Virus record (IMG/VR): IMGVR_UViG_3300046692_000091
Coordinates: 124,001-188,000 of that record
Strand: one strand, 5' to 3'
Length of the DNA: 64,000 nucleotides
Shown: positions 23,160 through 55,499 of the stretch, one piece after another
Numbering within the stretch: position 1 is the stretch's first letter
Layout: each line of letters begins with the position of its first letter
The notes under the pieces: generated by a model
What the model saw: only the letters and a program-made list of their open reading frames with translations
Told to the model about the DNA's origin: nothing
Database searches by the model: none
Made by a program: the position numbers and the translations under genes

Positions 23160-23298
23160 TCTATTGCTTTTCTTTTTTATACTCAGCACCCCTCTAGTAT
23201 AGGTGAACGACCATACTAAAAGCAAAGGAGGGAGGCTTTTATTTTGTAACATGGTTACGTTAGTAACATCCTTATTCCCTACCAACAAGAGATCAGAA

Positions 23299-23637
23299 AT
23301 GACCGCAAGTAATGTTGTAAAGATCCCGGTAATCTGCATGGGTGCAGAATCGAAATTCCTGACTAAGAAGACAGTTCAGCTCGAGAAGATCGTAAGCTGT
23401 CAATTGGTAGACGCATATGGCGTACAGATTAAGGATTATGTGGTAGCTAATGAAGCTCCTATTCCTAATCTGTACCAACGGACCATCTATAAGAAAGGTC
23501 TGGCAACATCCGAAAAGATTGGGTCGCTATTTGTTGATCAAGTAACAGGGTCTTATACTCTGAAGCTGTTAGATCCATTGGCTCGACCAGCAGGTGTTGA
23601 TATCCAACTTACCATCCAAACGAAGGAAGCCGCATGA
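23299..23637 (+). CDS. Hypothetical beta-rich protein
   Basis: 112 aa; ATGA-coupled to next gene. Confidence 0.75.
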   Translation: MTASNVVKIPVICMGAESKFLTKKTVQLEKIVSCQLVDAYGVQIKDYVVANEAPIPNLYQRTIYKKGLATSEKIGSLFVDQVTGSYTLKLLDPLARPAGVDIQLTIQTKEAA

Positions 23638-24996: not shown

Positions 24997-25461
24997 ATGC
25001 AACATCCGGTAGTAGCTAAACAAGTATTTTCGGATCTAGGTATCGTGCTCGATGGCCGTTCCTATTTCCCAGAAGATTCCCTCAATGCAACCTTGATCGA
25101 AAAGGTACTGCAGCGAGAAGCCCGTTGGTTGACCTATAACAAAGCTGGTGTGCTAGTTGGCTATAATGCCGAAGAGGATATCCAACTAGGTACTCGGGTT
25201 GCACTGAACCATAACGGTTCGGTAGATGACGCCGATATTTTCTGGTCACCTCTCTCTGGGGATAAAGATACCCCTTTGGTTCAGCTGTATGCTGAAGGCT
25301 TAGAAGAGACAACCAATCGCATGCAAGAAACCCGTGCGTACATGATGCAATGTATGGGTAGCCGTGGCTGGGTTCCTACCTTTGATGATGCTGGTGATCT
25401 GGTGGGGCTATGCCGTAACTTCATTATCGATGTAAGTCAAATCAATCGTCGTGCTGCTTAA
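24997..25461 (+). CDS. Hypothetical protein
   Basis: 154 aa. Confidence 0.8.
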   Translation: MQHPVVAKQVFSDLGIVLDGRSYFPEDSLNATLIEKVLQREARWLTYNKAGVLVGYNAEEDIQLGTRVALNHNGSVDDADIFWSPLSGDKDTPLVQLYAEGLEETTNRMQETRAYMMQCMGSRGWVPTFDDAGDLVGLCRNFIIDVSQINRRAA

Positions 25462-26385: not shown

Positions 26386-26532
26386 ATGGAAACGTTAGGC
26401 TCTTCATTAATATTGTTAGGTATTCTCGCCTTCTTCTTCGGTTTCGGTGATATGTGCGGGACTAATAAAAAGGTAGTTGTTGGTAGTGTTGCCGCAATCG
26501 TAGCGGGCGTGATTATCAATTTAATCAACTAG
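26386..26532 (+). CDS. Small two-TM membrane protein (48 aa)
   Basis: SD aaggt; METLGSSLILLGILAFFFG...; below track cutoff. Confidence 0.6.
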   Translation: METLGSSLILLGILAFFFGFGDMCGTNKKVVVGSVAAIVAGVIINLIN

Positions 26533-26540
26533 GGGGTTCT

Positions 26541-26717
26541 ATGTGGGCACTCTATCTCGTAGCATTTGTTATCTTCGCTATCGGCTTGGAGTTCTTCTTA
26601 GGGGAACGTCAATCCAAAGTAGACGATGATGACATTGGACGTACCAGTACTGGTGAAGAACGTTTCGCAGGACTGGTATTAATGTTGGTAGGTGTAACAA
26701 TTGCATTATGGGTGTAA
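26541..26717 (+). CDS. Small two-TM membrane protein (58 aa)
   Basis: SD ggggg; two hydrophobic helices around an acidic loop. Confidence 0.6.
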   Translation: MWALYLVAFVIFAIGLEFFLGERQSKVDDDDIGRTSTGEERFAGLVLMLVGVTIALWV

Positions 26718-26718
26718 C

Positions 26719-26916
26719 ATGGAAACATTAGTTGGAATTATAGCTGCAATCGCCATGGCCAGTGCAATTGCTTTACTGGTATTGGGGATCAACGCTCTAT
26801 GTTGGTGGGAAGCCTTTCTTCCCAAAACAAAGCGAAAAGTATTTATCAGTGCCTGTGTGTTGGGCACGATTGTATTTTTCAGTGTGCTTTGGTTTATTTG
26901 GCTCATGCACAACTAA
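26719..26916 (+). CDS. Small two-TM membrane protein (65 aa)
   Basis: METLVGII...; 1 nt after upstream stop. Confidence 0.6.
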   Translation: METLVGIIAAIAMASAIALLVLGINALCWWEAFLPKTKRKVFISACVLGTIVFFSVLWFIWLMHN

Positions 26917-26934
26917 CACAAAAAATCTGAAATC

Positions 26935-26942
26935 TATATTAC
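26935..26942 (+). promoter_or_regulatory. Early promoter TATATTAC
   Basis: Context near-identical to promoter at 47089. Confidence 0.8.
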
Positions 26943-26977
26943 TACTGTGAATTCATAAAGACCATTAGGGGCTACAA

Positions 26978-27718
26978 ATGCAAATCGAACAACGCGATAC
27001 CAACATGACCCGCACTATGATGGACGCTTTCTTCAGTTGGTTCGCGGCAAACGACATCAGCCGTATCCACGTTATTGTGGACGGCACCCTTTTTGACAGT
27101 AAGGCTTTCGTAGACGATATGAATGGTCTGTATCAGATCCGTTTGTCTATTGGCGCTGCTGCAGTTCGTGGTTTCGGTTATCATGAACATGGCTTCTCGT
27201 ACGGTTGCATGCGTCAAGGTGTTCATATCGACATGGACATTCCTTACGAAGCAGTGTTGGGCTTTGTTATCCCAACTGGTGAGAACACCGAAGTCATCTT
27301 CGAGGTTCCTAACCTGGAACGTCACCAAATGAAACTCGAACAACAGAAAGGTTTGTTGCCACAACTGGGTAACTTCGCTTTCGTTGATCATGAAGGTAAA
27401 GCACTGCCGGATGAAATGGTTCATGAGCTGATGCGTCAACTCGTTCCATCCAATGCGGCCAAAGCAATCGAAGCCGCTCCTTATGCCGTACATGGCATCG
27501 CCCCAGAGACCCAGGATGAGGAAGGCAATCAACTGCCAACCATCACTGACCTGATGACCCGTAAACCTCTGGCGCAGCGTCCTGCTAAGCCCCAGCCTAA
27601 AGAAGCTCAAGCACCATTGTTGAACTTCGGCAATGTAAGTGGTACACAACTTCCAGCCCCAAAACCAACCCGTGCCATCCCTGCAGGTTGGTCCGTAATC
27701 CAAGGAGGTAAAGCATGA
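26978..27718 (+). CDS. sspB: SspB-like ClpXP adaptor
   Basis: MDAFFSWFAAND / HVIVDGT / IRLSIGAAAV / DIPYEAVL track E. coli SspB RAFYEWLLDN / HLVVDVT / IVLNIAPRAV / SVPLAAVL; P/Q-rich linker; C-terminal SVIQGGKA. Confidence 0.75.
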   Translation: MQIEQRDTNMTRTMMDAFFSWFAANDISRIHVIVDGTLFDSKAFVDDMNGLYQIRLSIGAAAVRGFGYHEHGFSYGCMRQGVHIDMDIPYEAVLGFVIPTGENTEVIFEVPNLERHQMKLEQQKGLLPQLGNFAFVDHEGKALPDEMVHELMRQLVPSNAAKAIEAAPYAVHGIAPETQDEEGNQLPTITDLMTRKPLAQRPAKPQPKEAQAPLLNFGNVSGTQLPAPKPTRAIPAGWSVIQGGKA

Positions 27719-28428
27719 ACCCGTGTGACCAACTGGCGCATATCACGTGCCGTCGTAAATCCCCGCGCCTGGCTGAGATCTTCAAGAAGCTGGATGGGGA
27801 TTCGCATTTCCAGCAATTGGATATGTATGAACTGAATGACATGTTGTTCCGTGAACTAGCATGGATGCCAAGTATGGTATCGATGGATTCTGAAGAACTC
27901 TATCAGGTCAACATCCGCACTATCCCGATCGCTCGTTTCGAAGATGGTGGTCTCCGTGTACTGTCAATGGATACCCAAACCTTCTGGCCCAGTATGAATG
28001 ATGTACAATCGGAACATGCTGTTCTGCAAGACATGGTTCATGCAGCTATGGTTAAGCATGTAATGTCCTGGGGCCTACGAATCAAAGAACCAGAACTGCG
28101 TATGCCGGTGTACTTCTCATTCGATCAACTCCGTCAGAATCTGGACGCTGTTGTTGTAGGGGCTGGTTTGCACACACTGACTGACGAACTCCGTCGTGTG
28201 CCACGTAAAACCAATCACCTCACTATTAATGTGGTGTTGACGATTACACCATCATTGATGTACCAGATCCGTGACCAGTCTCGTGCACAGATCTACATCT
28301 GCGACAACAACTTGCAACCTATCAATAACTTTGAAGGTGTTGTTGATAATGGGAACGAAAGTTTCTTTGACTTCTTGCGGAAACATAGTTACGACAGTAG
28401 CGTAATGTTAATGCCAGGTCTGGAGTAA
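27715..28428 (+). CDS. Hypothetical protein
   Basis: 237 aa, ATGA-coupled to sspB. Confidence 0.8.
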   Translation: MNPCDQLAHITCRRKSPRLAEIFKKLDGDSHFQQLDMYELNDMLFRELAWMPSMVSMDSEELYQVNIRTIPIARFEDGGLRVLSMDTQTFWPSMNDVQSEHAVLQDMVHAAMVKHVMSWGLRIKEPELRMPVYFSFDQLRQNLDAVVVGAGLHTLTDELRRVPRKTNHLTINVVLTITPSLMYQIRDQSRAQIYICDNNLQPINNFEGVVDNGNESFFDFLRKHSYDSSVMLMPGLE

Positions 28429-28431
28429 CAA

Positions 28432-29814
28432 ATGCTTATTCAGGAAGTGTTAGGGTTATACCACAATGCAATAGAGATGCTCAGTTCGGGTGACTCAACA
28501 GTCAAAGGTTTCATGACGTTGGGTGTCATGGGTCTGTTGGGTTATTTGGGGCGTACGATACCCCAAACAATCTGGGCGTTCATCAAACGTAACACGATTT
28601 CATCGATGACTTTCACTCGCGCAGGTTCATATTCCATGGACATGCAGAACTACGTAGAGTTCATGCGTTGGTTCTCACAATCCAAGTGGGCTAAATATGA
28701 TCGCAATCGACGTGTAACATTCGATCGGAATGACCCAGCTTTTGGACCAGGTACTGGCTTCCACTGGTTTGTTTGGAAAGGTCGTTACTTCTGGTTTAAT
28801 GTTGTCCGTTTGAATTCCTCCGGTACCGATATCGAGAAAGAAGAATTCACACTGTATACATTCGGTCGTACCACTAAACCATTCGAAGAACTGGTGGAAG
28901 AGTTCCGTATCAAGCCATGCAAGAAATCGATACGTATCTATGCCCCATCGAATGACGGTTGGAACTATCAGGGGCGACTACGGTTGGACGCTGATGAAAC
29001 ACTGATCATCGATCCAGAAGTAGAGAAAGAGTTCTTTGGTTCTATCGACTGGTATCTGGCAAACGAACCATGGTACCGTAAACGTGGATTGGCTTATAAA
29101 CACACTGTCGTGTTGCATGGTCCACCTGGTACCGGTAAGACTTCGTTGATCAAACGTGCAGCCCGGAAGTACAAGCGGGATATTCACTTCCTGAACTTGG
29201 CTACCCATGGTCGTCAGTTGACTGATCTGATGGGTAAGTTGTCGGCTGGTGACATTCTGTGCATTGAAGACTTTGATGATGTCAAGTCGTTGCACCGTCG
29301 CACTGGTCCGAAGAAGATGGAAATCGGTGAACTGGACATCGGTTCCGATAAGAAACCAGAAGCGTTGTTGATGGACTGCGAGATTCAACTCAGTACCTTC
29401 CTCAACGTTCTGCAAGGCGTTGTAGAGCTCGATGATATCATTATCGTGCTGACTACTAACCACCTGGAACTGATCGATCCAGCGGTCTACCGTCCGTCCC
29501 GTGTGAACAAACTGATCGAAGTGCTACCTCTGAAAGATCCGGAAGTTAAGCGCTATATCGACACGATGTATGATAATCCTACTTACGATCGTAATGTAAT
29601 GTACCCAGACGTTCCAGCTTCTACCCTGGCTGGTATCTTCATGGAGCACCCGAACGATCACCTGGCTTTCATTGATAAGCTAGATTCGTTGGACGACAAA
29701 TACGTCGCGGAGAACTATGCTCTACAACCAGAGCCCCCGCGCCCACCTTCCAAGAAAAATAAGGACCCTTCTCCAATAGGAGGACAGGTTCTTGAAACCG
29801 TAGAGGCAGCGTAA
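28432..29814 (+). CDS. BCS1-like membrane-anchored AAA+ ATPase
   Basis: N-terminal TM; GPPGTGKTS, IEDFD, STFLNVLQG, TTNH, DPAVYRPSR. Confidence 0.85.
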   Translation: MLIQEVLGLYHNAIEMLSSGDSTVKGFMTLGVMGLLGYLGRTIPQTIWAFIKRNTISSMTFTRAGSYSMDMQNYVEFMRWFSQSKWAKYDRNRRVTFDRNDPAFGPGTGFHWFVWKGRYFWFNVVRLNSSGTDIEKEEFTLYTFGRTTKPFEELVEEFRIKPCKKSIRIYAPSNDGWNYQGRLRLDADETLIIDPEVEKEFFGSIDWYLANEPWYRKRGLAYKHTVVLHGPPGTGKTSLIKRAARKYKRDIHFLNLATHGRQLTDLMGKLSAGDILCIEDFDDVKSLHRRTGPKKMEIGELDIGSDKKPEALLMDCEIQLSTFLNVLQGVVELDDIIIVLTTNHLELIDPAVYRPSRVNKLIEVLPLKDPEVKRYIDTMYDNPTYDRNVMYPDVPASTLAGIFMEHPNDHLAFIDKLDSLDDKYVAENYALQPEPPRPPSKKNKDPSPIGGQVLETVEAA

Positions 29815-29815
29815 C

Positions 29816-30157
29816 ATGGATAATTTTGCACGTCACAACTTCAACGTCTACCCGGAAGAGATGACCTACCACAAAGATCGCTTCTTGCAAAATGATGCTG
29901 GTTGTGCGGTAGTTACATTCGTTGGGGCTTTTCATGGCGATACCATTCTGACGAATGAAGTCGAAGTGATTGCACGTGGTGTGGAACTGGGTAAGATCGC
30001 TCGGTTCCTGGTTCGTTCAGGTGATCAGGAAACCCATCTCGACATGGATCTGACAACCTGCCGTTATGAAGCAGAAAGCAATATCAAAACCAAACTGGGT
30101 GACGTCGTACTGGTGTTCACCGCGCACTACCCAACCGAAGAAAAGGAAGCTGCATGA
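29816..30157 (+). CDS. Hypothetical protein
   Basis: 113 aa; coupled to prs-like gene. Confidence 0.8.
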   Translation: MDNFARHNFNVYPEEMTYHKDRFLQNDAGCAVVTFVGAFHGDTILTNEVEVIARGVELGKIARFLVRSGDQETHLDMDLTTCRYEAESNIKTKLGDVVLVFTAHYPTEEKEAA

Positions 30158-31092
30158 TTCGCGTTCGTTATGGTTACAGTCATAGTTCTTCGACGATGCC
30201 TGTTGAAATGAAACACATGCCGGGTGGTGAACTCCACCCAACGCTTGACACGGATCACTTGAATGCCAGCGAGTACACCATCTACGCCGACACCAAGAGC
30301 TCGGATGATCTGTTTGGTATTGCTCTGGTAGCTAACGCTATCCGCCGTAATGCCGAAGTACCAATCAAAGCACTCTCTCTGGTAATTGGTTATGTGCCTT
30401 ATGCACGCCAAGACCGTATTGTTGGTGGTGAAGGTGAGGCACTATCGATCGAAGTGATGGCCGACTTCATCAACATGCTGAACTTCGATGCAGTGATCAT
30501 TGCAGATCCCCACAGCGATACAACTCCGGCTTTGATCCGTAATGCTAAGGTCATGTCCCAGGAAATGATCTTCAGTGAATTCCTGATCCGCGAAACGGCA
30601 GACTTCGATACCCGTGAGATTGCTTACGTGCCATCTGAGTACATCCTGGTTTCCCCAGATGCTGGTGCGATCAAGAAGACCGAGAAGCTGGCTACTAAGT
30701 TCGGCTTTAAAGGTGTAGCGTACGCTAACAAAACACGCAATACCCGTACCGGTAAGATCACTGGTTGTACTGTGGACCGATTGGTTTTGGATGGTGAACC
30801 AGCAATGATAAGTCAACTACAAGGCGAGAAGCTTTTAGTAGTTGACGATATCTGTGATGGTGGTTATACATTTATCCAATTGGCCGAAGTGTTGAATACC
30901 TACAGCCCAGCTAGTTTGGAACTGTACGTCACTCACGGTATCTTCTCTAAAGGTCTCGAGCCGTTGTATAAAGCGGGTTACACTCGTGTTGTTACTACCA
31001 ATGCTTATGGCATGGAAGGTAGCACTGAGCTGTATGCGCTTGAGAAAGAAGAAAAGAAAGCACTCAAATTCGTAAAAATCGATATTGCCTAA
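30154..31092 (+). CDS. prs: Ribose-phosphate pyrophosphokinase-like protein (candidate Adps of NARP1)
   Basis: YVPYARQDR, DPHS, VSPDAGA, VVDDICDGGYTF, THGIFS. Confidence 0.9.
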   Translation: MIRVRYGYSHSSSTMPVEMKHMPGGELHPTLDTDHLNASEYTIYADTKSSDDLFGIALVANAIRRNAEVPIKALSLVIGYVPYARQDRIVGGEGEALSIEVMADFINMLNFDAVIIADPHSDTTPALIRNAKVMSQEMIFSEFLIRETADFDTREIAYVPSEYILVSPDAGAIKKTEKLATKFGFKGVAYANKTRNTRTGKITGCTVDRLVLDGEPAMISQLQGEKLLVVDDICDGGYTFIQLAEVLNTYSPASLELYVTHGIFSKGLEPLYKAGYTRVVTTNAYGMEGSTELYALEKEEKKALKFVKIDIA

Positions 31093-31101
31093 GGATTCAA
31101 A

Positions 31102-32916
31102 ATGTCAATGTTTCTCAACGCTGGTACCGCTACTGACTTCTACAAACCTGGCCACGGTCCACTGTATCCAGAAGGCACTACCCGTAAGTACTCCAACTTC
31201 ACCCCACGCTCGGCGAAGAACTTCCTGCGTTCCAAAAGCTGCTCGGCTTACTATGATAACAAAGTAGTAAACTTCGGCCTGTATGGTACCTGGCAAGAAC
31301 TGGTTGACCTGTGGGATAAAACCTTCTTCCAAGTTTCGAAGAAGAAAGCAATCGCCTTCATCAAACGTCGTTTTGATAATGGCACTGGTCCTGATGTTAT
31401 CACAACTGCTCAAATCGCTGCACTCCACGATGTCGGCTTCCTGCCGGTAACTGTGTTGTCCATCGAAGAAGGTAACCGTGTCGATATCGGCATTCCTCTG
31501 TGGGTTATCTATAACTCCGAAGAATACCCAGAACACTACTGGCTGGTTAACTACCTGGAAACCATCACCAGTTCGTACAACTGGCAGTCGATCACCAACG
31601 CAACCATCGCCTACGAATATCGTCGTCTGTGCGAGATCTGGGCTGCTAAGACCTGTGATAACAATGACCACGTTAAAATCCAAGGTCATGACTTCTCGTT
31701 CCGTGGCATGCCTGGTCCAGAAGCTGCTGGTCGTTCTAACGCGGGCCACTTGGCTTCGTTCTGGGGTACTGATACTATCCCGGCAATCGATTACATCGAA
31801 CGCCTGTATAACGCCAACTCTGATAAAGAAGTCCTGGGTGTATCGGTTACTGCTACTGAACACGCCGTTGCTACTGCGAATATCCTGTCTCGCCTGAAGC
31901 ACAAGATCCGTGCTCTGCCTGCCGACACTGTTATCTCCGGTGAAATGATCGATCTGCTCAAACTCGAATGCGAGCGTGAGTACATCCTGGAAATCATCCT
32001 GGTAAAAGTGAAGAAGGGTATCATCTCCCTGGTTTGCGATTCCTTCGACTTCTGGAGTGTTATCGAACACGTACTGCCTTCGCTCCGTAAGGAAATCGAA
32101 AGCCGTATCGTGAACGAACTCGGTCTGGCTAAAGTAGTTGTACGTCCTGACTCGGGTAATCCGGTACACGTGATCTGTGGTTTCAAAATCATGGGTGAGT
32201 TCGCTGACATTGCTGCATTCTCGAAGCATGTCTACGACAACGGTACTTTCGAACTGGGTATGTACGAAGCTGTGAAGATTGGTGATGTTTACCATGAACT
32301 GCAGAATACTACTTGGACTAGCTGCTCTATCGAAGACTTCCTGGGTCGTGAGATGAAGCGGGTAGAAGCAATCGGTGCGATCGAATCCCTGTGGGAATCT
32401 TTCGGTGGTCACACTAACACCAAAGGCTATAAAGTACTGAACTCGTACATCGGTCTGATCTATGGTGACTCGATCACTGTTGAACGTACCGAACAGATCT
32501 TCCAACGTCTGGCTGATAAAGGCTTCGCTTCGTCGAACGTTGTTCTGGGTATCGGTTCGTTTACTTATCAGTACAACACTCGTGATACCTTCGGCATGGC
32601 CATGAAGGCAACTGCGTGTGAAGTGCAGGATGAACTGATCGAGCTGTACAAAGATCCGAAGACCGCTGCATCCAAGAAGTCCGCTAAAGGCTTCCTGCGT
32701 GTACTGAAAGACGAGAACGGCAAATATACACTCGAACAAGAAGTGGAAATGGATTGGAAAGATCTGTTCTACGGTTCGGGTGAACTGAAGCCTCTGTTCC
32801 ACAACGGTAAGTTCCAGCGTGCTGAACATTTCGGTGATGTACGTAGTCGCATTGACTCTACTTTCGTAGTAGCTAATGACGATGACGGTTTCGACCCAGT
32901 CGAAGAAGCGGCATAA
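31102..32916 (+). CDS. nadV: Nicotinamide phosphoribosyltransferase-like protein (candidate Namat of NARP1)
   Basis: TDFYKPGH, HDFSFRGM, F.GTDT, ATEH, DSFDFW, VRPDSG, LIYGDSIT, RDTFG.AMKAT. Confidence 0.92.
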   Translation: MSMFLNAGTATDFYKPGHGPLYPEGTTRKYSNFTPRSAKNFLRSKSCSAYYDNKVVNFGLYGTWQELVDLWDKTFFQVSKKKAIAFIKRRFDNGTGPDVITTAQIAALHDVGFLPVTVLSIEEGNRVDIGIPLWVIYNSEEYPEHYWLVNYLETITSSYNWQSITNATIAYEYRRLCEIWAAKTCDNNDHVKIQGHDFSFRGMPGPEAAGRSNAGHLASFWGTDTIPAIDYIERLYNANSDKEVLGVSVTATEHAVATANILSRLKHKIRALPADTVISGEMIDLLKLECEREYILEIILVKVKKGIISLVCDSFDFWSVIEHVLPSLRKEIESRIVNELGLAKVVVRPDSGNPVHVICGFKIMGEFADIAAFSKHVYDNGTFELGMYEAVKIGDVYHELQNTTWTSCSIEDFLGREMKRVEAIGAIESLWESFGGHTNTKGYKVLNSYIGLIYGDSITVERTEQIFQRLADKGFASSNVVLGIGSFTYQYNTRDTFGMAMKATACEVQDELIELYKDPKTAASKKSAKGFLRVLKDENGKYTLEQEVEMDWKDLFYGSGELKPLFHNGKFQRAEHFGDVRSRIDSTFVVANDDDGFDPVEEAA

Positions 32917-32918
32917 TC

Positions 32919-32944
32919 GGACGGGGACCTTCGGGTCCCCATCC
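32919..32944 (+). terminator. Intrinsic terminator
   Basis: ggggacc-ttcg-ggtcccc plus T tract. Confidence 0.85.
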
Positions 32945-33609: not shown

Positions 33610-35034
33610 ATGAAAGAATATTTGTCCATGCAGCAAGAAGTACTGGAACGAGGCGTGCCGAAAGGTGACCGCACTGGTACTGGTACTATTTCTTGCCCTG
33701 GTGTTAGTCGTGTATATGACATCAGCGATAATCGGTTGGCTGCAACGTCTACCAAAAAGATTCACATCAAGACAGGTCAGGTTGAAGAAGACTGGATGTT
33801 GTCAGGTGATACCCGACTGAAGTTCCTGAAAGACAACAACTGCAACATCTGGGACGAATGGGTTCTGAAAGGTACCGGTATCTATCGTAATCGTACGGTC
33901 AAAGAAATGCGTCGAGTTTATACTCGTAACCATTTCGGTTGGTCTAAACCAGTCGTTCTAGATATCGGTTGTGACCCAGAGAACACAGAAGTCTGGAATA
34001 AGGTTGCAGAAACAGAGGACTTCGAAGTCTGGGCATGGGACGTAACTAAAGGCATCGGCATTAAACCACATCATGGCATTCGGGATAAGTCCAAGGATAG
34101 TCTGAATTGGATGAACTGGCAAAACCCAGAAGATCCTATTTGGCTTCAGTTCTACTCTGCTCTGGGTATCTCTGATCTGGAAGTAATGGACGGAGAACTC
34201 GGTAAGGTATACGGGGCAATGTTCCGTAGTATCGAAGACACCCGTATCGATAGTGGTGGGGGTGTTAATGAGAAAGAATGGACAGACCGTGGATTCTCTT
34301 GGGAAGGTATGTTAGGTGATGGCCGATCGGTGTATACGCGTAAGATCGATCAGGTTGCTAAACTACTGTATGATCTGGAGCATAACCCAGATTCTCGTCG
34401 TTTGATTCTGTGTCCATGGAACCCAGCATATGTAGATGAACAAGCATTGCCTCCTTGCCATTCATTCATCCAGTTCTGGACGCGTGAGATGACTTCCGAG
34501 CAACGTTACCATGTCTATTGTAAGCAGTATGACCGTGAGCAAAAAGAGTTGCTTGACGACATTGCTAAACGTAGTCGTGCCGACATTTATACTGCGCATG
34601 CTCCATATCCGTTGTCATGCTTTGCTGAAGTCGACGACCGTGGTACTTTCTTCGATCATTATAAGCTGCATGCTTATCTAGATGAGCTTGATGTTCCACG
34701 TCGTGCTTTGACATGCATTGTTTATATGCGGTCTAACGATGTGTTCTTGGGTGCACCGTATAACCTCACGTTCTATTCTTCACTAACGCACAAGCTGGCT
34801 CACCAGTTTAACATGTACGGTGAGAAACTGGTTCACTTCGTAGGTGATGCACATATCTACCAGAACCATTTGGATCAAGTTGCCGAACAACAAGCTCGTA
34901 CACCTGACCGTGATATGCCTCGACTGAAGATCAATGTTCCGAAAGGTACTTCGATTCTCGACATGACGTTCCAAGATCTGGAAGTGATCGGTTATAACCC
35001 ACAGCCTGCTATTGAAGCACCTGTAGCTGTTTAA
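33610..35034 (+). CDS. thyA: Thymidylate synthase with two large insertions
   Basis: DRTGTGT, IWDEW, ELGKVYG, SRRLI...WNP, LPPCH, RSNDVFLGAPYN, GDAHIY.NH. Confidence 0.95.
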   Translation: MKEYLSMQQEVLERGVPKGDRTGTGTISCPGVSRVYDISDNRLAATSTKKIHIKTGQVEEDWMLSGDTRLKFLKDNNCNIWDEWVLKGTGIYRNRTVKEMRRVYTRNHFGWSKPVVLDIGCDPENTEVWNKVAETEDFEVWAWDVTKGIGIKPHHGIRDKSKDSLNWMNWQNPEDPIWLQFYSALGISDLEVMDGELGKVYGAMFRSIEDTRIDSGGGVNEKEWTDRGFSWEGMLGDGRSVYTRKIDQVAKLLYDLEHNPDSRRLILCPWNPAYVDEQALPPCHSFIQFWTREMTSEQRYHVYCKQYDREQKELLDDIAKRSRADIYTAHAPYPLSCFAEVDDRGTFFDHYKLHAYLDELDVPRRALTCIVYMRSNDVFLGAPYNLTFYSSLTHKLAHQFNMYGEKLVHFVGDAHIYQNHLDQVAEQQARTPDRDMPRLKINVPKGTSILDMTFQDLEVIGYNPQPAIEAPVAV

Positions 35035-35080: not shown

Positions 35081-35338
35081 ATGCAACAGAATATAATTGT
35101 AGCAGTAAGCTATCCGGTTGTAAGTAAAGACAGCGTAAAGTTTGTTCATTCAATCAACAATGATGAGGGTACGATTACCTTCGTCTCTGTCGATACTCCT
35201 GATAAAGCACAACTTTTTGGTGGCGAAGTAGGGGCGGTTGCAGAGTTCTTAAACTACCATGTTAAACCTAATCTGGAAAATACATGGAAGTTCAATTCTG
35301 TTGACATAAACAAAATCAAACCAGAGGAGGCAGCATGA
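35081..35338 (+). CDS. Hypothetical protein
   Basis: 85 aa, SD ggag. Confidence 0.8.
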   Translation: MQQNIIVAVSYPVVSKDSVKFVHSINNDEGTITFVSVDTPDKAQLFGGEVGAVAEFLNYHVKPNLENTWKFNSVDINKIKPEEAA

Positions 35339-38828: not shown

Positions 38829-39305
38829 GTGACAGATCCAAGACAGCAAGAAATAGATTGCATCGAACTCATGCGTGACCGGTTGATCAAAGAACCACAT
38901 AACTGGCGTGGTACTGTGTTGGAAGAATCCAGTTGGTACAAGCTGCTAGTGGGTGAACTGGATCTTACTGAGTTCACAGTAGCATTTCGCTACTTGCTCA
39001 GTTATTGGGATAAACGTCGACTTAATGTTGGCGGCATCATGAAAATGGAAACCTATATTCGCTTGTGGAATTGCCTATCGGATGACGCTAAACAACAATG
39101 GCCTGATATCGATATCAAGGTGCATCAGTTTGTCGGTCGTCCAGAATGTGCGATCCATGTCCTGCAGGATATAATGCGTGGCCCTACTGACATCAGTACT
39201 TACCTGGATCAATTTCTGCGCGATGATGTCGGTTCTACCTTCCGCTGGGTACAAGGTATCCAAAGAGCAAAAGTAACACGCCAACTCAATAAGGAAGCAG
39301 CATGA
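38829..39305 (+). CDS. Hypothetical protein
   Basis: 158 aa, GTG start. Confidence 0.75.
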   Translation: MTDPRQQEIDCIELMRDRLIKEPHNWRGTVLEESSWYKLLVGELDLTEFTVAFRYLLSYWDKRRLNVGGIMKMETYIRLWNCLSDDAKQQWPDIDIKVHQFVGRPECAIHVLQDIMRGPTDISTYLDQFLRDDVGSTFRWVQGIQRAKVTRQLNKEAA

Positions 39306-39703
39306 GTAATCAACCTGTAACGCGTCGTATTTATAACCTGGTTCGCATCAAAGACAAACAAGGTAAAGCTTACACAGGCTTTGTTGTTGGTCTAGCCGAG
39401 AAGTGTGGTGATAGTGAACTCGATGGTCAAGCATTCTATGCCACCGAAGATCTCAGTGGTTGGACGGATGAACAGTTCGCTTTAGTCAATAAGAAACTGA
39501 AGGCCATCTGGGACTGTGCTGTCGATTATCTCGTATGGGATTGCACTCATGGCGATAATGAGCAATATATTTCCCGCATTTGTCCTGGTGATCTATTGTT
39601 GGTCATTGACGACAAAGTTGTTCCGGTTATCGGGGAACTACGTGAACTCATGTTTGAATATGAGCACTACACAGTTGATGCCCCTCTGGAGAAAGCAGCA
39701 TAA
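39302..39703 (+). CDS. Hypothetical protein
   Basis: 133 aa; RICPGDLLL resembles TIRPGDFLV of 35335. Confidence 0.8.
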   Translation: MSNQPVTRRIYNLVRIKDKQGKAYTGFVVGLAEKCGDSELDGQAFYATEDLSGWTDEQFALVNKKLKAIWDCAVDYLVWDCTHGDNEQYISRICPGDLLLVIDDKVVPVIGELRELMFEYEHYTVDAPLEKAA

Positions 39704-39975
39704 TGGCTAAGGCAGTCCGACATAAAAGTGGTGTGTGGATGCAACCAGGTACAGAAGGCTGGGAAAAGTATCATAACCCACCTGTAATAATGAAAGTACC
39801 TAATGCTCCACTCTCACTCGATCAGTACATGGACGAGCTTGATAAGAAGTGGCGTAAAGCCGAAGGGCGTGTTCCTGTTAAAGAACTGGATGAACGGGGA
39901 CTGATGCTAGAAGGCCGTATTCCATGGGACCCTGTTCGACTGAAACAACTCACCGAAGAACGGTTGGCTGCATGA
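39703..39975 (+). CDS. Hypothetical protein
   Basis: 90 aa, TAATG-coupled. Confidence 0.75.
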   Translation: MAKAVRHKSGVWMQPGTEGWEKYHNPPVIMKVPNAPLSLDQYMDELDKKWRKAEGRVPVKELDERGLMLEGRIPWDPVRLKQLTEERLAA

Positions 39976-40997: not shown

Positions 40998-41005
40998 TAT
41001 ATTAC
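40998..41005 (+). promoter_or_regulatory. Early promoter TATATTAC
   Basis: Exact motif with aaactttttaaagg upstream. Confidence 0.8.
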
Positions 41006-54771: not shown

Positions 54772-55206
54772 ATGACAGTTGCACCAGAAATGGTTCCATT
54801 CGTTTATTGCGGTGGTACGTTAGCTGTATTCATCATAGGTACATTACTGTTCTTACTTATCCGCGGCATGATGGATCAGCGTGAGAATGAAAAGCCCGGC
54901 GAAAACAAACGTACTCGTTACATGATGCGTTTCGTTTATGATGCAGTTAACGTTAGGAGAATCGGCTATTACTCTACGAATACGATGAAGCCTTATATAC
55001 AGGCGTATCCAAAGTATGCGGCGGTAATAACTGGTTATCCGGCGGCGAAGTCTGTGTTTGATGACCATGCTAAACTAAGCCTTGGTCAAGTCAAAGAACA
55101 ATTTGCTTATCTGTACCCTACGTGCCGAATCTATCTAATGGAAGAACGCACTTACTTCGGTATTAAATCCTGGTATGACCTAACGAGCGTGGATCTGGTC
55201 CCATGA
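54772..55206 (+). CDS. N-terminally anchored membrane protein
   Basis: TM at approximately residues 9-30. Confidence 0.75.
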   Translation: MTVAPEMVPFVYCGGTLAVFIIGTLLFLLIRGMMDQRENEKPGENKRTRYMMRFVYDAVNVRRIGYYSTNTMKPYIQAYPKYAAVITGYPAAKSVFDDHAKLSLGQVKEQFAYLYPTCRIYLMEERTYFGIKSWYDLTSVDLVP

Positions 55207-55499
55207 GTGAATATGTAATCGAAATCATCCGTGGTCGTGATCACATTTATCTGTCTCGTAAAGAGAGCGGTAAAGCCAATGTCACACCGCAAGAACGCAA
55301 CGCTATTACTTTTGAATCATCAACTGCAGCTAAGCTAGTGATTGATGCATTGATGGAAAAGCCCACCTCAGACATGCGTAAGCTGTTGAAGGTTCAAGAA
55401 GACTGGAATCGTCCAGTCCAACTGTTGGCCCGTAAGCGGTTGGGTAATAGTCACATGACTACCAACGCCCGTATGTATCTATTTAAGGAAGCCGCATAA
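55203..55499 (+). CDS. Hypothetical protein
   Basis: 98 aa, coupled. Confidence 0.75.
   Translation: MSEYVIEIIRGRDHIYLSRKESGKANVTPQERNAITFESSTAAKLVIDALMEKPTSDMRKLLKVQEDWNRPVQLLARKRLGNSHMTTNARMYLFKEAA

What the first reader, a model, noticed from the sequence alone, without database searches (positions are those of the whole stretch)
26978..27718. Phage-encoded SspB adaptor leads the operon containing the AAA ATPase and NAD+ genes
Seen: SspB-like N-domain, long P/Q-rich linker, and C-terminal WSVIQGGKA. It is the first gene after an early promoter, in a terminator-free run to 32916 in which three of six proteins end in AA. Known: SspB binds the AANDxNY part of ssrA tags and tethers substrates to the ClpX N-domain via its C-terminal tail. 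Inference: the phage rewires host ClpXP specificity, either delivering host defence proteins or timing its own enzymes.
Basis: partly seen in the sequence, partly recalled or inferred. Interest (0 to 1): 0.65.

Follow-up and report, generated by a model that had tools for sequence, protein, structure and literature searches.

The report
Jumbo-phage SspB-like ClpXP adaptor gene
A giant Pseudomonas-type phage carries, as the first gene of an early operon, a diverged copy of the bacterial SspB adaptor. It probably docks on the host's ClpXP protease, and such genes have been noticed in related phages but never tested.

Summary
ORF 26978..27718 (+) encodes 246 aa ending in WSVIQGGKA. It sits 36 nt behind a phiKZ-type early promoter motif and heads six tightly packed genes that end at a strong hairpin terminator (32923-32940).

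Homology of the N-domain to SspB is well supported:
- a profile of 14 relatives hits solved SspB structures (E 4e-7);
- hhalign against E. coli SspB gives 95% probability;
- the top 13 Foldseek PDB hits are all SspB.

The rest is a disordered P/A/Q-rich linker plus a C-terminal peptide. That peptide is the only part besides the N-domain conserved as far as phiKZ gp232. In D6, RVTF4 and phiKZ-like phages it reads P-x-L-[TR]-V-I-x-GGK, which is the bacterial ClpX-binding motif P-x-L-[RKT]-V-V-K plus a GGK(A) extension. In the window's own clade Leu is replaced by Trp. Co-folding with a Pseudomonas ClpX N-domain gave only weak support (0.38 against a best control of 0.16).

Only about 11 of 43 conserved bacterial SspB columns are kept, so ssrA is not shown to be the cargo. 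The "-AA ends" are mostly ribosome-site and overlapping-start artefacts and are not conserved.

SspB-like genes are already noted in Erwinia phage RAY (gp039, cytoplasmic) and annotated in RVTF4 and Bobae. This is a new member of a known kind; its function is untested.

The parts
26913..26950 (+). phiKZ-type early (virion RNA polymerase) promoter motif; core TATATTAC at 26935-26942
   Evidence: The window holds 9 copies against 2.0 expected. The genome holds 30 copies on the + strand sharing an extended AT-rich context, mostly 25-45 nt before start codons. The same motif lies upstream of the homologues in D6, RVTF4 and Phabio. The general rule for jumbo-phage early promoters is given in PMC7598289 and PMC8244752.
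26967..26971 (+). Shine-Dalgarno-like AGGGG, 6 nt before the ATG
   Evidence: Read directly from the sequence.
26978..27718 (+). SspB-like adaptor gene, 246 aa (P0001)
   Evidence: relatives.
27005..27331 (+). N-terminal SspB-fold domain (residues ~10-118)
   Evidence: The family profile hits PDB SspB at E 4e-7. hhalign against E. coli SspB gives 95.4%, E 1.9e-8. Eight of 14 relatives hit PF04386. The top 13 Foldseek hits are all SspB, TM up to 0.76.
27332..27682 (+). Disordered P/A/Q-rich linker (residues 119-235) carrying clade-conserved short motifs: PYAVHG, P-T-I-x-D-LM-x-RKP-x-x-QRP and K-E-x3-PLL[ND]FG
   Evidence: pLDDT 42-59. Composition and conservation profile. Invariant columns.
27683..27715 (+). 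C-terminal docking peptide ...PAGWSVIQGGKA, an XB-like tail
   Evidence: Four of the seven invariant columns across distant relatives (Phabio, the phiKZ-like phage Bobae) lie here. The likeness to bacterial P-x-L-[RKT]-V-V-K tails is shown. Co-folding with the ClpX N-domain gave weak support.
27715..28428 (+). Translationally coupled gene 2 (237 aa, unknown function); its ATG overlaps the SspB-like stop (ATGA)
   Evidence: The same coupling occurs in D6 and RVTF4. No family match. The fold model is of low confidence.
28432..29814 (+). BCS1-like AAA+ ATPase (BCS1_N + AAA)
   Evidence: Pfam E 4e-12 and 5e-12; phrog_7485 E 2e-110.
29816..30157 (+). 113-aa protein of unknown function
   Evidence: no family match.
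30154..31092 (+). PRPP-synthetase-like protein, a candidate Adps of NARP1
   Evidence: phrog_619 E 1e-73; PF00156, PF13793 and PF14572. The NARP1 signature is described in the paper read.
31102..32916 (+). NAMPT-like protein, a candidate Namat of NARP1
   Evidence: PF04095 E 2.5e-34; PF18127 weak; phrog_448 E 3e-169. No Nmnat (PF01467) was found in the genome.
32923..32940 (+). Intrinsic terminator hairpin GGGGACCTTCGGGTCCCC followed by a T-rich tract
   Evidence: The start of the same hairpin (GGGGACCTTCGGGT) follows the NAMPT-like gene in D6; the printed context ends there.

Best explanation
The gene encodes a phage version of the SspB adaptor.

Shown. Its N-terminal domain has the SspB peptide-binding fold. 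A ~115-residue flexible linker follows, then a short C-terminal peptide that is under strong conservation across Pseudomonas chimalliviruses from this phage to phiKZ gp232.

Inferred:
- The gene is transcribed early by the injected virion RNA polymerase.
- The protein stays in the cytoplasm, outside the phage nucleus.
- It docks through its tail on the zinc-binding N-domain of the host ClpX, and so changes which proteins ClpXP degrades, by bringing cargo held in the N-domain groove.
- The cargo is probably not, or not only, the ssrA tag, because most groove and dimer-interface residues conserved in bacterial SspB are replaced.
- The position at the head of an early operon with a NARP1-like NAD+-rebuilding pair suggests a host-takeover or counter-defence role.
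- It is accessory rather than essential, because phiKZ gp232 tolerates transposon insertions.
For: Homology and fold:
- NCBIfam SspB equivalogs match residues 14-117 at E 9e-4.
- The profile of alignment A1 hits 1zsz, 1ou8, 1ox9 and 8et3 at E 4e-7 to 4e-5.
- Eight of 14 relatives hit PF04386, best E 3e-8.
- hhalign against E. coli SspB gives 95.4%.
- Foldseek ranks 1-13 are all SspB.

Tail:
- Thirty-one gammaproteobacterial SspBs end in P-x-L-[RKT]-[VIL]-[VI]-K.
- A scoring matrix built from those tails has its best hit exactly 4 residues from the C-end in D6, RVTF4, P0009-P0012, P0014 and the phiKZ-like phage Bobae. Scores are 10.8-17.0; bacterial tails score 14 or more; the background rate of scores >=10 is 6e-5 per position.
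- Beyond the N-domain, the tail is the main part conserved in Phabio and phiKZ-like homologues; one more invariant column, L192, lies in the linker.
- Co-folding of residues 200-246 with two copies of CLPX_PSESM 1-62 plus Zn scored 0.38 against a best control of 0.16, verdict 'weak support'. That mark was reached by 51 of 78 solved complexes and 2 of 108 mismatched pairs. Passes at 0.60 or under were only 5 of those 78 solved complexes, and all 4 mismatches that passed scored in that range. The runs agreed in >=70% of contacts, and partner pLDDT was >=49.
- In P. aeruginosa, the last eight residues of SspB mediate ClpX binding (PMC13251409).

No phage protease partner: no ClpP and no ClpX zinc-finger family was found in the 314.8-kb genome. 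Phabio keeps the SspB-like gene and the tail but has no BCS1-like AAA.

Early expression: promoter motif.

Precedent: Erwinia phage RAY gp039, an SspB homologue, is diffuse in the cytoplasm.

Dispensability: PHIKZ232 has 22 insertion sites, whereas essential genes have 0.
Against: - P0001 alone does not reach Pfam SspB, and phmmer against the PDB finds nothing.
- In the window's own clade the tail is A-G-W-S-V-I-Q. Pro and Leu of the XB motif are replaced by Gly and Trp, and the matrix score is negative.
- The tail carries a GGK(A) extension, whereas in the 27 of 31 bacterial SspBs that end in Lys, that Lys is the last residue.
- The co-folding pass is weak and may partly reflect memory of solved SspB-tail complexes.
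- Only about 11 of 43 columns that are >=80% conserved in bacterial SspB are kept. R-P-Y-L, R15, N-A-R-F and Y-A-x-E-N-G are lost.
- Within the clade, linker residues 166-225 are as conserved as the N-domain. This hints at further partners that the simple adaptor model does not explain.
- No expression or binding data exist; no RNA runs hold this sequence.
Confidence: 0.55

Rival explanations
1. Blocker or decoy rather than deliverer. The tail occupies the ClpX N-domain, or the N-domain sequesters tags. This would shut out host SspB and other N-domain-dependent adaptors and substrates, and so protect phage proteins or freeze host regulatory proteolysis such as release of the MucA/AlgU stress factor.
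For: It rests on the same tail evidence as the main model. The groove has diverged from the bacterial consensus, so it may carry no cargo. Host SspB feeds AlgU-MucA to ClpXP in P. aeruginosa. AlgU-type promoters are enriched among host start sites specific to phiKZ infection, so this axis is touched during infection.
Against: The N-domain is under clear purifying selection, with invariant W21, the Q53/I54/L56 cluster, A62, F73, C77 and P89-Y-E-A. A pure tail decoy would not need that. A linker of more than 100 residues is typical of a tether.
Confidence: 0.2
2. The SspB fold is reused as a peptide-binding module, and the tail and linker motifs dock on something other than ClpX: another host factor, or a phage protein such as the coupled gene-2 product or the BCS1-like AAA ATPase two genes downstream.
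For: SspB-like, gene 2 and AAA are syntenic in this phage, D6 and RVTF4, and the first two are translationally coupled. The linker motifs PYAVHG, LM-x-RKP and PLL[ND]FG are conserved in the clade. The tail of the window's clade departs from the XB consensus.
Against: Phabio has the SspB-like gene with the same V-I-x-GGK tail but no BCS1-like AAA. In the phiKZ-like phage Bobae the AAA lies about 30 kb away. The tails of D6, RVTF4 and Bobae score like genuine bacterial XB motifs.
Confidence: 0.15
3. A classical SspB replacement. It binds ssrA tags and speeds their clearance by ClpXP while the host is being shut off.
For: Family membership. Some core positions are kept: W20, I51, L53, N54 in most relatives, A59, F72, G78, P86 and A89.
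Against: About three quarters of the columns conserved in bacterial SspB are changed; by PMC9963277 these mark the ssrA groove and the dimer interface. N54 is Ser in the window's clade. The host already has SspB: 136 of 151 sampled Gammaproteobacteria have it.
Confidence: 0.07
4. The operon's own enzymes that end in -AA are the cargo (self-timing).
For: Three of six operon proteins end in AA. Genome-wide, 16 of 404 ORFs do so against 2.7 expected, P 3e-8.
Against: Nine of the 16 ends (gap -4, -1 or +1) lie directly at the next gene's start: six read K-E-A-A on AAGGAAGCnGCATGA, which is the ribosome site plus an overlapping ATG. Orthologues end differently: the D6 AAA ends ...EPAV, the D6 NAMPT ...VVEA, and the Phabio NAMPT ...NAKV. 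The ends are E-A-A, not the hydrophobic L-A-A of ssrA-type degrons (general knowledge).
Confidence: 0.03

Closest known systems
Bacterial SspB (PF04386; E. coli b3228; P. aeruginosa SspB), the ClpXP specificity-enhancing adaptor
   Same: The N-domain fold and the overall layout of folded domain, disordered linker and C-terminal docking peptide. The hydrophobic-x-V-[VI]-x tail aligns with P-x-L-[RKT]-V-V-K.
   Different: - About 20-24% identity, and only about 11 of 43 conserved columns kept.
- The linker is longer (~115 aa) and carries clade-conserved motifs.
- The tail has a GGK(A) extension and, in this clade, Trp in place of Leu.
- It is encoded by a phage behind a virion-RNAP early promoter, not in an sspA-sspB operon.
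Erwinia phage RAY gp039 ('SspB-like ClpXP adaptor', Prichard et al. 2023) and the 'stringent starvation protein B' annotations in Pseudomonas phages RVTF4 and Bobae; phiKZ gp232
   Same: SspB-like genes of nucleus-forming jumbo phages. RAY gp039 is cytoplasmic. RVTF4 is a 40%-identical orthologue in the same synteny. phiKZ gp232 is a distant homologue (hhalign 96.5%) with the same tail.
   Different: None has been tested for function. RAY gp039 was not retrieved by tblastn with this protein, so it is more distant. The tail analysis and the promoter and operon context given here are not in those sources as far as I could read them.
Phage-encoded ClpS adaptors of jumbo phages (Iyer et al. 2021, PMC7824862)
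   Same: A phage copy of a host AAA+ protease adaptor, presumed to redirect a host protease.
   Different: A different adaptor family and a different protease (ClpAP, N-degron pathway).

Membership tests
SspB adaptor family (PF04386) | N-terminal SspB substrate-binding domain (one helix plus beta-sandwich) | tested here: met
   The family profile hits PDB SspB at E 4e-7. hhalign gives 95.4%. Eight of 14 relatives hit PF04386. The top 13 Foldseek hits are SspB, TM up to 0.76. P0001 alone is below the Pfam cut-off.
SspB adaptor family (PF04386) | Flexible, disordered linker between the domain and the tail | tested here: met
   pLDDT is 42-59 over residues 120-240; the stretch is rich in P, A and Q. 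Unlike bacterial SspB, part of it (166-225) is conserved within the clade.
SspB adaptor family (PF04386) | C-terminal ClpX-binding (XB) peptide, P-x-L-[RK]-V-V-K at the very end | tested here: inconclusive
   Relatives D6, RVTF4 and Bobae score 10.8-17.0 with a matrix built from 31 bacterial tails, and the hit lies 4 residues from the end. P0001 reads A-G-W-S-V-I-Q-GGKA and scores below 0. Its position is homologous, and V-I-x-GGK is invariant.
SspB adaptor family (PF04386) | Physical binding of the tail to the ClpX N-terminal zinc-binding domain | tested here: inconclusive
   Co-folding scored 0.38 against a best control of 0.16, verdict 'weak support'. That mark was reached by 51 of 78 solved complexes and 2 of 108 mismatches. 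Passes at <=0.60 were only 5 of those 78, and all 4 mismatches that passed scored in that range. A binding assay is needed.
SspB adaptor family (PF04386) | Conserved ssrA-binding groove and dimer interface | tested here: not met
   Of 43 columns that are >=80% conserved in 31 gammaproteobacterial SspBs, the phage consensus keeps about 11. R-P-Y-L, R15, N-A-R-F and Y-A-x-E-N-G are replaced. Reading the conserved columns as groove plus interface follows PMC9963277. Peptide binding itself was not testable.
SspB adaptor family (PF04386) | Homodimer | not tested
NARP1 (Adps + Namat) for the two downstream NAD+ genes | An adjacent Prs-like gene (PF14572) and Nampt-like gene (PF18127 + PF04095), without Nmnat | tested here: met
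   Pfam hits, with PF14572 and PF18127 weak. No PF01467 in the genome. The signature is as described in the paper read. The enzymatic specificity (ADPR-PP versus PRPP) is not testable here.

The most novel reading that the evidence does not exclude
Pseudomonas chimalliviruses (this phage, D6, Psa21, RVTF4, Phabio and phiKZ gp232) share a viral 'degrader' adaptor. It would plug into host ClpX through a virus-specific variant of the XB tail (hydrophobic-x-V-I-x-GGK). Using a re-shaped SspB groove and extra linker motifs, it would feed selected host proteins to ClpXP from the cytoplasm while the phage genome is shielded in its nucleus. Candidate cargoes are defence factors or the MucA/AlgU stress switch. 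This would be a bacterial-virus counterpart of the viral hijacking of ubiquitin ligases.
Probability: 0.25. Interest if true: 0.75.

Novelty: new member of a known kind. Interest (0 to 1): 0.5.

Why it matters
Nucleus-forming jumbo phages leave the host cytoplasm, including its proteases, outside their protective shell. How they control it is largely unknown.

A conserved, early-expressed adaptor that could re-aim ClpXP would give a concrete, testable handle on that control. The questions are which proteins it holds, whether it delivers them or blocks delivery, and whether it helps against defence systems encoded next to NAD+-depleting immunity countermeasures.

The tail comparison also offers a simple sequence rule for finding such adaptors in other phages: an SspB-fold domain plus a C-terminal hydrophobic-x-V-I-x-GGK peptide.

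The basic idea of an SspB-like adaptor in a chimallivirus is already in the literature and in database annotations, so the surprise is moderate.

Tried and rejected
- Direct Pfam scan of P0001: no SspB hit, only a sub-threshold GMP_PDE_delta match, taken as chance.
- phmmer of P0001 against the PDB: nothing.
- PF04386 against the phage genome missed the gene. It gave one chance-level hit elsewhere, G000:30565-30747, E 0.04.
- Gene 2 (27715..28428): no Pfam, PHROG or NCBIfam family and no Atlas lead. Only 5 close relatives were found. The AlphaFold model has pLDDT 47.7, too poor to search, so no fold search was run. BLASTP against the 235-aa protein near phiKZ-like gp232 gave E 0.012 over 23 residues, not accepted as homology.
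I used 30 unnamed gammaproteobacterial SspB loci plus E. coli instead.
- Paper search for the promoter core TATATTAC gave only unrelated hits. That phiKZ itself uses this exact core is from my memory and is not verified here. The general rule for jumbo-phage early promoters is cited.
- No RNA sequencing run holds the region.
- The -AA degron idea was rejected.
- I could not recover from the papers held which SspB residues contact ssrA, so groove conservation is judged only through the conserved-column comparison.
- Genome G040 (unpublished) enters only the tally of 136 of 151. No other claim rests on it.
Full report
**What is there.** The window is positions 124001-188000 of a 314,814-bp virus record judged complete. 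Its closest named relatives are the Pseudomonas jumbo phages D6, Psa21 and RVTF4, at about 76% nucleotide identity over conserved genes. The best DNA holder is a rhizosphere metagenome. An AGGGG ribosome site lies 6 nt before the ATG. Thirteen database relatives at 36-91% identity, plus homologues in D6, Psa21, RVTF4 and Phabio, show that it is a real, conserved gene.

**Is the N-domain SspB?**
- P0001 alone does not reach Pfam SspB and finds nothing in the PDB by phmmer.
- Four NCBIfam SspB equivalogs match residues 14-117 weakly, best E 9e-4.
- A profile of the 14-sequence alignment A1 hits ten distinct solved SspB sequences (1zsz, 1ou8, 1ox9, 1yfn, 8et3) at E 4e-7 to 4e-5, over residues 14-96.
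- Eight of the 14 relatives hit PF04386 on their own, best E 3e-8.
- hhalign of A1 against E. coli SspB, taken from the K-12 record, gives 95.4% probability, E 1.9e-8.
- The AlphaFold model has pLDDT ~70-78 over residues 10-110 and a disordered remainder. Its first 13 Foldseek hits in the PDB are all SspB, with target TM up to 0.76.

Homology of the N-domain to SspB is therefore well supported.

**The tail.** I aligned P0001 with much more distant homologues: Phabio PHABIO_349 (25% identity) and the 302-aa protein of the phiKZ-like phage Bobae (20%).
- Only seven columns are invariant. Four of them, V-x-x-G-G-K, lie in the last seven residues. The middle regions are unalignable.
- phiKZ gp232 is the same protein (hhalign 96.5%).
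- For comparison I extracted SspB from 30 sampled gammaproteobacterial genomes plus E. coli. All but four end in P-x-L-[RKT]-[VIL]-[VI]-K; the other four differ at the first or the last position.
- A scoring matrix built from these seven positions finds its best hit exactly four residues from the C-end in D6 (PHLRVIQ), RVTF4 (PHLTVIQ), P0009-P0012, P0014 and Bobae (PKLTVIK). Scores are 10.8-17.0; bacterial tails score 14 or more. Only 6e-5 of all positions in the phage proteome reach 10.
- These phage tails are thus bacterial ClpX-binding (XB) motifs followed by a virus-specific GGK(A).
- The window's own clade (P0001-P0008) departs from this. Its tails read A-G-W-S-V-I-Q, N-N-W-R-V-I-E and similar, with Trp where Leu stands and no Pro, and the matrix score is negative. 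Phabio has Met at that place.
- The family rule is therefore hydrophobic-x-V-I-x-G-G-K.
- In P. aeruginosa, the last eight residues of SspB mediate ClpX binding; Kd rises from 27 nM to 179 nM when they are replaced by alanine (PMC13251409).

**Co-folding.** Residues 200-246 of P0001 were folded with two copies of residues 1-62 of P. syringae ClpX and zinc.
- The score was 0.38 against a best control of 0.16, verdict 'weak support'.
- That mark was reached by 51 of 78 solved complexes and 2 of 108 mismatched pairs. Passes at 0.60 or under were only 5 of those 78 solved complexes, and all 4 mismatches that passed scored in that range.
- The runs agreed in at least 70% of contacts, and partner pLDDT was at least 49.
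- Solved SspB-tail/ClpX complexes exist, so part of the score may be memory.
- I treat this as compatible with binding, not as evidence of it.

**Cargo.**
- Among 43 N-domain columns that are at least 80% conserved in the 31 bacterial SspBs, the phage consensus keeps about 11: W20, I51, L53, N54, A59, F72, G78, P86 and A89, with A16 and D23 kept in part.
- It loses R10-P-Y-L13, R15, T27-P28, V41-P42, N67, A74-R-F76 and Y94-A-x-E-N-G99. In the window's clade N54 is Ser.
- The cryo-EM study of the SspB delivery complex states that only the dimer interface and the ssrA groove of SspB are highly conserved (PMC9963277).
- By that reading, the phage protein has re-shaped one or both, so binding to ssrA is not established and another cargo is likely. 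This step is inference.

**Linker.** Residues 119-235 are 12.8% Pro, 12.8% Ala and 8.5% Gln, so 'P/Q-rich' is roughly right. Unlike bacterial SspB linkers, residues 166-225 are as conserved within the D6/RVTF4/window clade as the N-domain (column identity 0.65-0.75 against 0.61-0.77). The invariant motifs are PYAVHG, P-x-x-x-x-LM-x-R...R and K-x4-PLL-x-FG. These are absent from Phabio and phiKZ-like proteins and remain unexplained. They may be extra docking sites.

**Operon.**
- TATATTAC at 26935-26942 sits in the context aaaaaatctgaaatcTATATTACtactgtgaat.
- The genome has 30 such sites on the + strand sharing this AT-rich context, mostly 25-45 nt before a start codon. Two bare copies on the - strand lack it.
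- The window has 9 copies against 2.0 expected.
- Reviews and dRNA-seq of phiKZ describe exactly this kind of conserved ~10-nt AT-rich element, centred near -10, as the early promoter read by the virion RNA polymerase (PMC7598289; PMC8244752).
- Variants of the motif lie directly upstream of the homologues in D6 (TATATAAC), RVTF4 (TACATTAC) and Phabio (TATATTAC).
- The six genes are spaced -4, +3, +1, -4 and +9 nt. The only strong terminator is GGGGACCTTCGGGTCCCC at 32923-32940, and the start of the same hairpin follows the NAMPT-like gene in D6.
- The next early motif in the window is at 40998.
- The gene order SspB-like, 237-aa unknown, BCS1-like AAA, small unknown, PRPS-like, NAMPT-like, then thymidylate synthase is kept in D6 and, as far as the record shows, in RVTF4.
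- In Phabio and phiKZ the SspB-like gene also lies just upstream of thymidylate synthase.

**Which protease?**
- The phage genome has no ClpP and no ClpX zinc-finger match.
- The BCS1-like AAA ATPase is an alternative partner by proximity. However, Phabio lacks it while keeping the SspB-like gene and tail, and in Bobae it lies about 30 kb away.
- The tail's partner is therefore more likely a host protein common to all these hosts, and ClpX fits best.

**The -AA ends.**
- Sixteen of 404 simple ORF calls end in AA against 2.7 expected (P 3e-8). It is the commonest terminal dipeptide.
- Nine of the 16 lie directly at the next gene's start (gap -4, -1 or +1).
- The typical form is AAG GAA GCn GCA TGA (K-E-A-A-stop), in which AAGGA is the next gene's ribosome site and the A of GCA plus the TG of the stop form its ATG.
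- In the operon this explains the 113-aa protein. For the AAA ATPase (GAGGCAGCGTAACATG) it plausibly accounts for the Glu codon only. It does not explain the NAMPT-like protein.
- Orthologues do not keep the ends: the D6 AAA ends ...EPAV, the D6 NAMPT-like ...VVEA, and the Phabio NAMPT-like ...NAKV.
- I reject the self-timing degron idea.

**Context from the literature.**
- Erwinia phage RAY gp039 was called an SspB homologue and a putative ClpXP adaptor. It was seen diffuse in the cytoplasm, outside the phage nucleus, and is not part of the chimallivirus core genome.
- The RVTF4 and Bobae records annotate their copies as 'stringent starvation protein B'.
- A survey of jumbo phages lists phage ClpS, ClpP and BCS1, but its main text does not mention SspB.
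- In a genome-wide transposon screen of phiKZ, PHIKZ232 carries 22 insertion sites (insertion index 0.030), while chimallin PHIKZ054 and other essential genes have none. The phiKZ homologue is therefore dispensable in the laboratory, as expected of an accessory host-manipulation or counter-defence gene.
- The two NAD+ genes match the published signature of NARP1: Prs-like Adps (PF14572) plus Nampt-like Namat (PF18127 + PF04095). NARP1 rebuilds NAD+ after immune depletion. The genome has no Nmnat, which NARP2 would need. This gives the operon a counter-defence flavour, but only by association.
- Among host start sites specific to phiKZ infection, AlgU-type promoters are enriched (78 of 423). 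Pseudomonas SspB is the adaptor that feeds AlgU-MucA to ClpXP. This is a lead for a possible cargo or competition. It is not a finding.

**Verdict.** The protein is a diverged phage member of the SspB adaptor family (homology confidence about 0.9).
- Docking on host ClpX and redirecting or blocking ClpXP is the best-supported mechanism (about 0.55 for delivery and 0.2 for blocking), but it is unproven. For this particular clade the tail is a variant whose binding must be measured.
- ssrA as cargo is doubtful, and -AA ends as degrons are rejected.
- Because SspB-like genes of chimalliviruses are already noted in print and in annotations, this is a new member of a known kind.
- What this analysis adds: the conserved tail rule reaching phiKZ gp232, the early-promoter placement, the conserved linker motifs, and the explanation of the -AA ends.

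Noticed in passing
window 716, 19179, 22337, 26935, 40998, 47089, 54288, 59287 (+); whole genome G000: A family of 30 + strand sites shares an AT-rich context around TATATTAC, mostly 25-45 nt before start codons. They look like the phage's set of early (virion RNA polymerase) promoters. Two bare copies on the - strand lack the context.
   Followed up: partly
window 30154-32916: The PRPP-synthetase-like and NAMPT-like gene pair has the Pfam signature published for the NARP1 counter-defence pathway (Adps + Namat). No Nmnat was found in the genome. Enzyme specificity was not tested.
   Followed up: partly
whole genome G000; in the window e.g. 23203-23637, 24997-25461, 35081-35338, 38829-39305, 39302-39703, 39703-39975, 55203-55499: AA is the commonest C-terminal dipeptide: 16 of 404 ORFs against 2.7 expected, with 12 of the 16 between window 23203 and 55499. 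Most are K-E-A-A from AAGGAAGCnGCATGA, the ribosome site plus the overlapping start of the next gene.
   Followed up: yes
window 28432-29814: A BCS1-like AAA+ ATPase with a hydrophobic N-terminal segment. It is conserved next to the SspB-like gene in D6 and RVTF4, lies elsewhere in phiKZ-like Bobae, and was not found in Phabio. Its role is unknown; a published survey suggests membrane-proximal translocation.
   Followed up: partly
window 27715-28428: A 237-aa protein whose ATG overlaps the stop of the SspB-like gene (ATGA). The coupling is kept in D6 and RVTF4. It has no family and no confident fold, and could be a partner or cargo.
   Followed up: partly
window 26386-26916: Three small, strongly hydrophobic ORFs (48, 58 and 71 aa) lie just upstream of the promoter. 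They are probably small membrane proteins of the preceding unit.
   Followed up: no
window 33610-35034: An unusually long thymidylate synthase (474 aa). The SspB-like gene lies a few genes upstream of its counterpart in D6, Phabio, Bobae and phiKZ, so the neighbourhood is an old syntenic block.
   Followed up: no
L122:1800-2708 (phiKZ PHIKZ232): phiKZ gp232 (302 aa, unannotated) is a distant homologue. By its position it matches the Bobae protein, which ends in K-L-T-V-I-K-GGKK; the phiKZ tail itself was not read out. It tolerates transposon insertions in a published screen.
   Followed up: partly
P0001 residues 166-225 (window 27473-27652): Conserved short motifs lie inside the 'linker': PYAVHG, LM-x-RKP-x-x-QRP and PLL[ND]FG. 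They are unexplained and absent from Phabio and phiKZ-like homologues.
   Followed up: no
G000:C1:30565-30747 (outside the window): A chance-level PF04386 match (E 0.04, 11.5 bits) in a 219-aa frame. It was not pursued.
   Followed up: no
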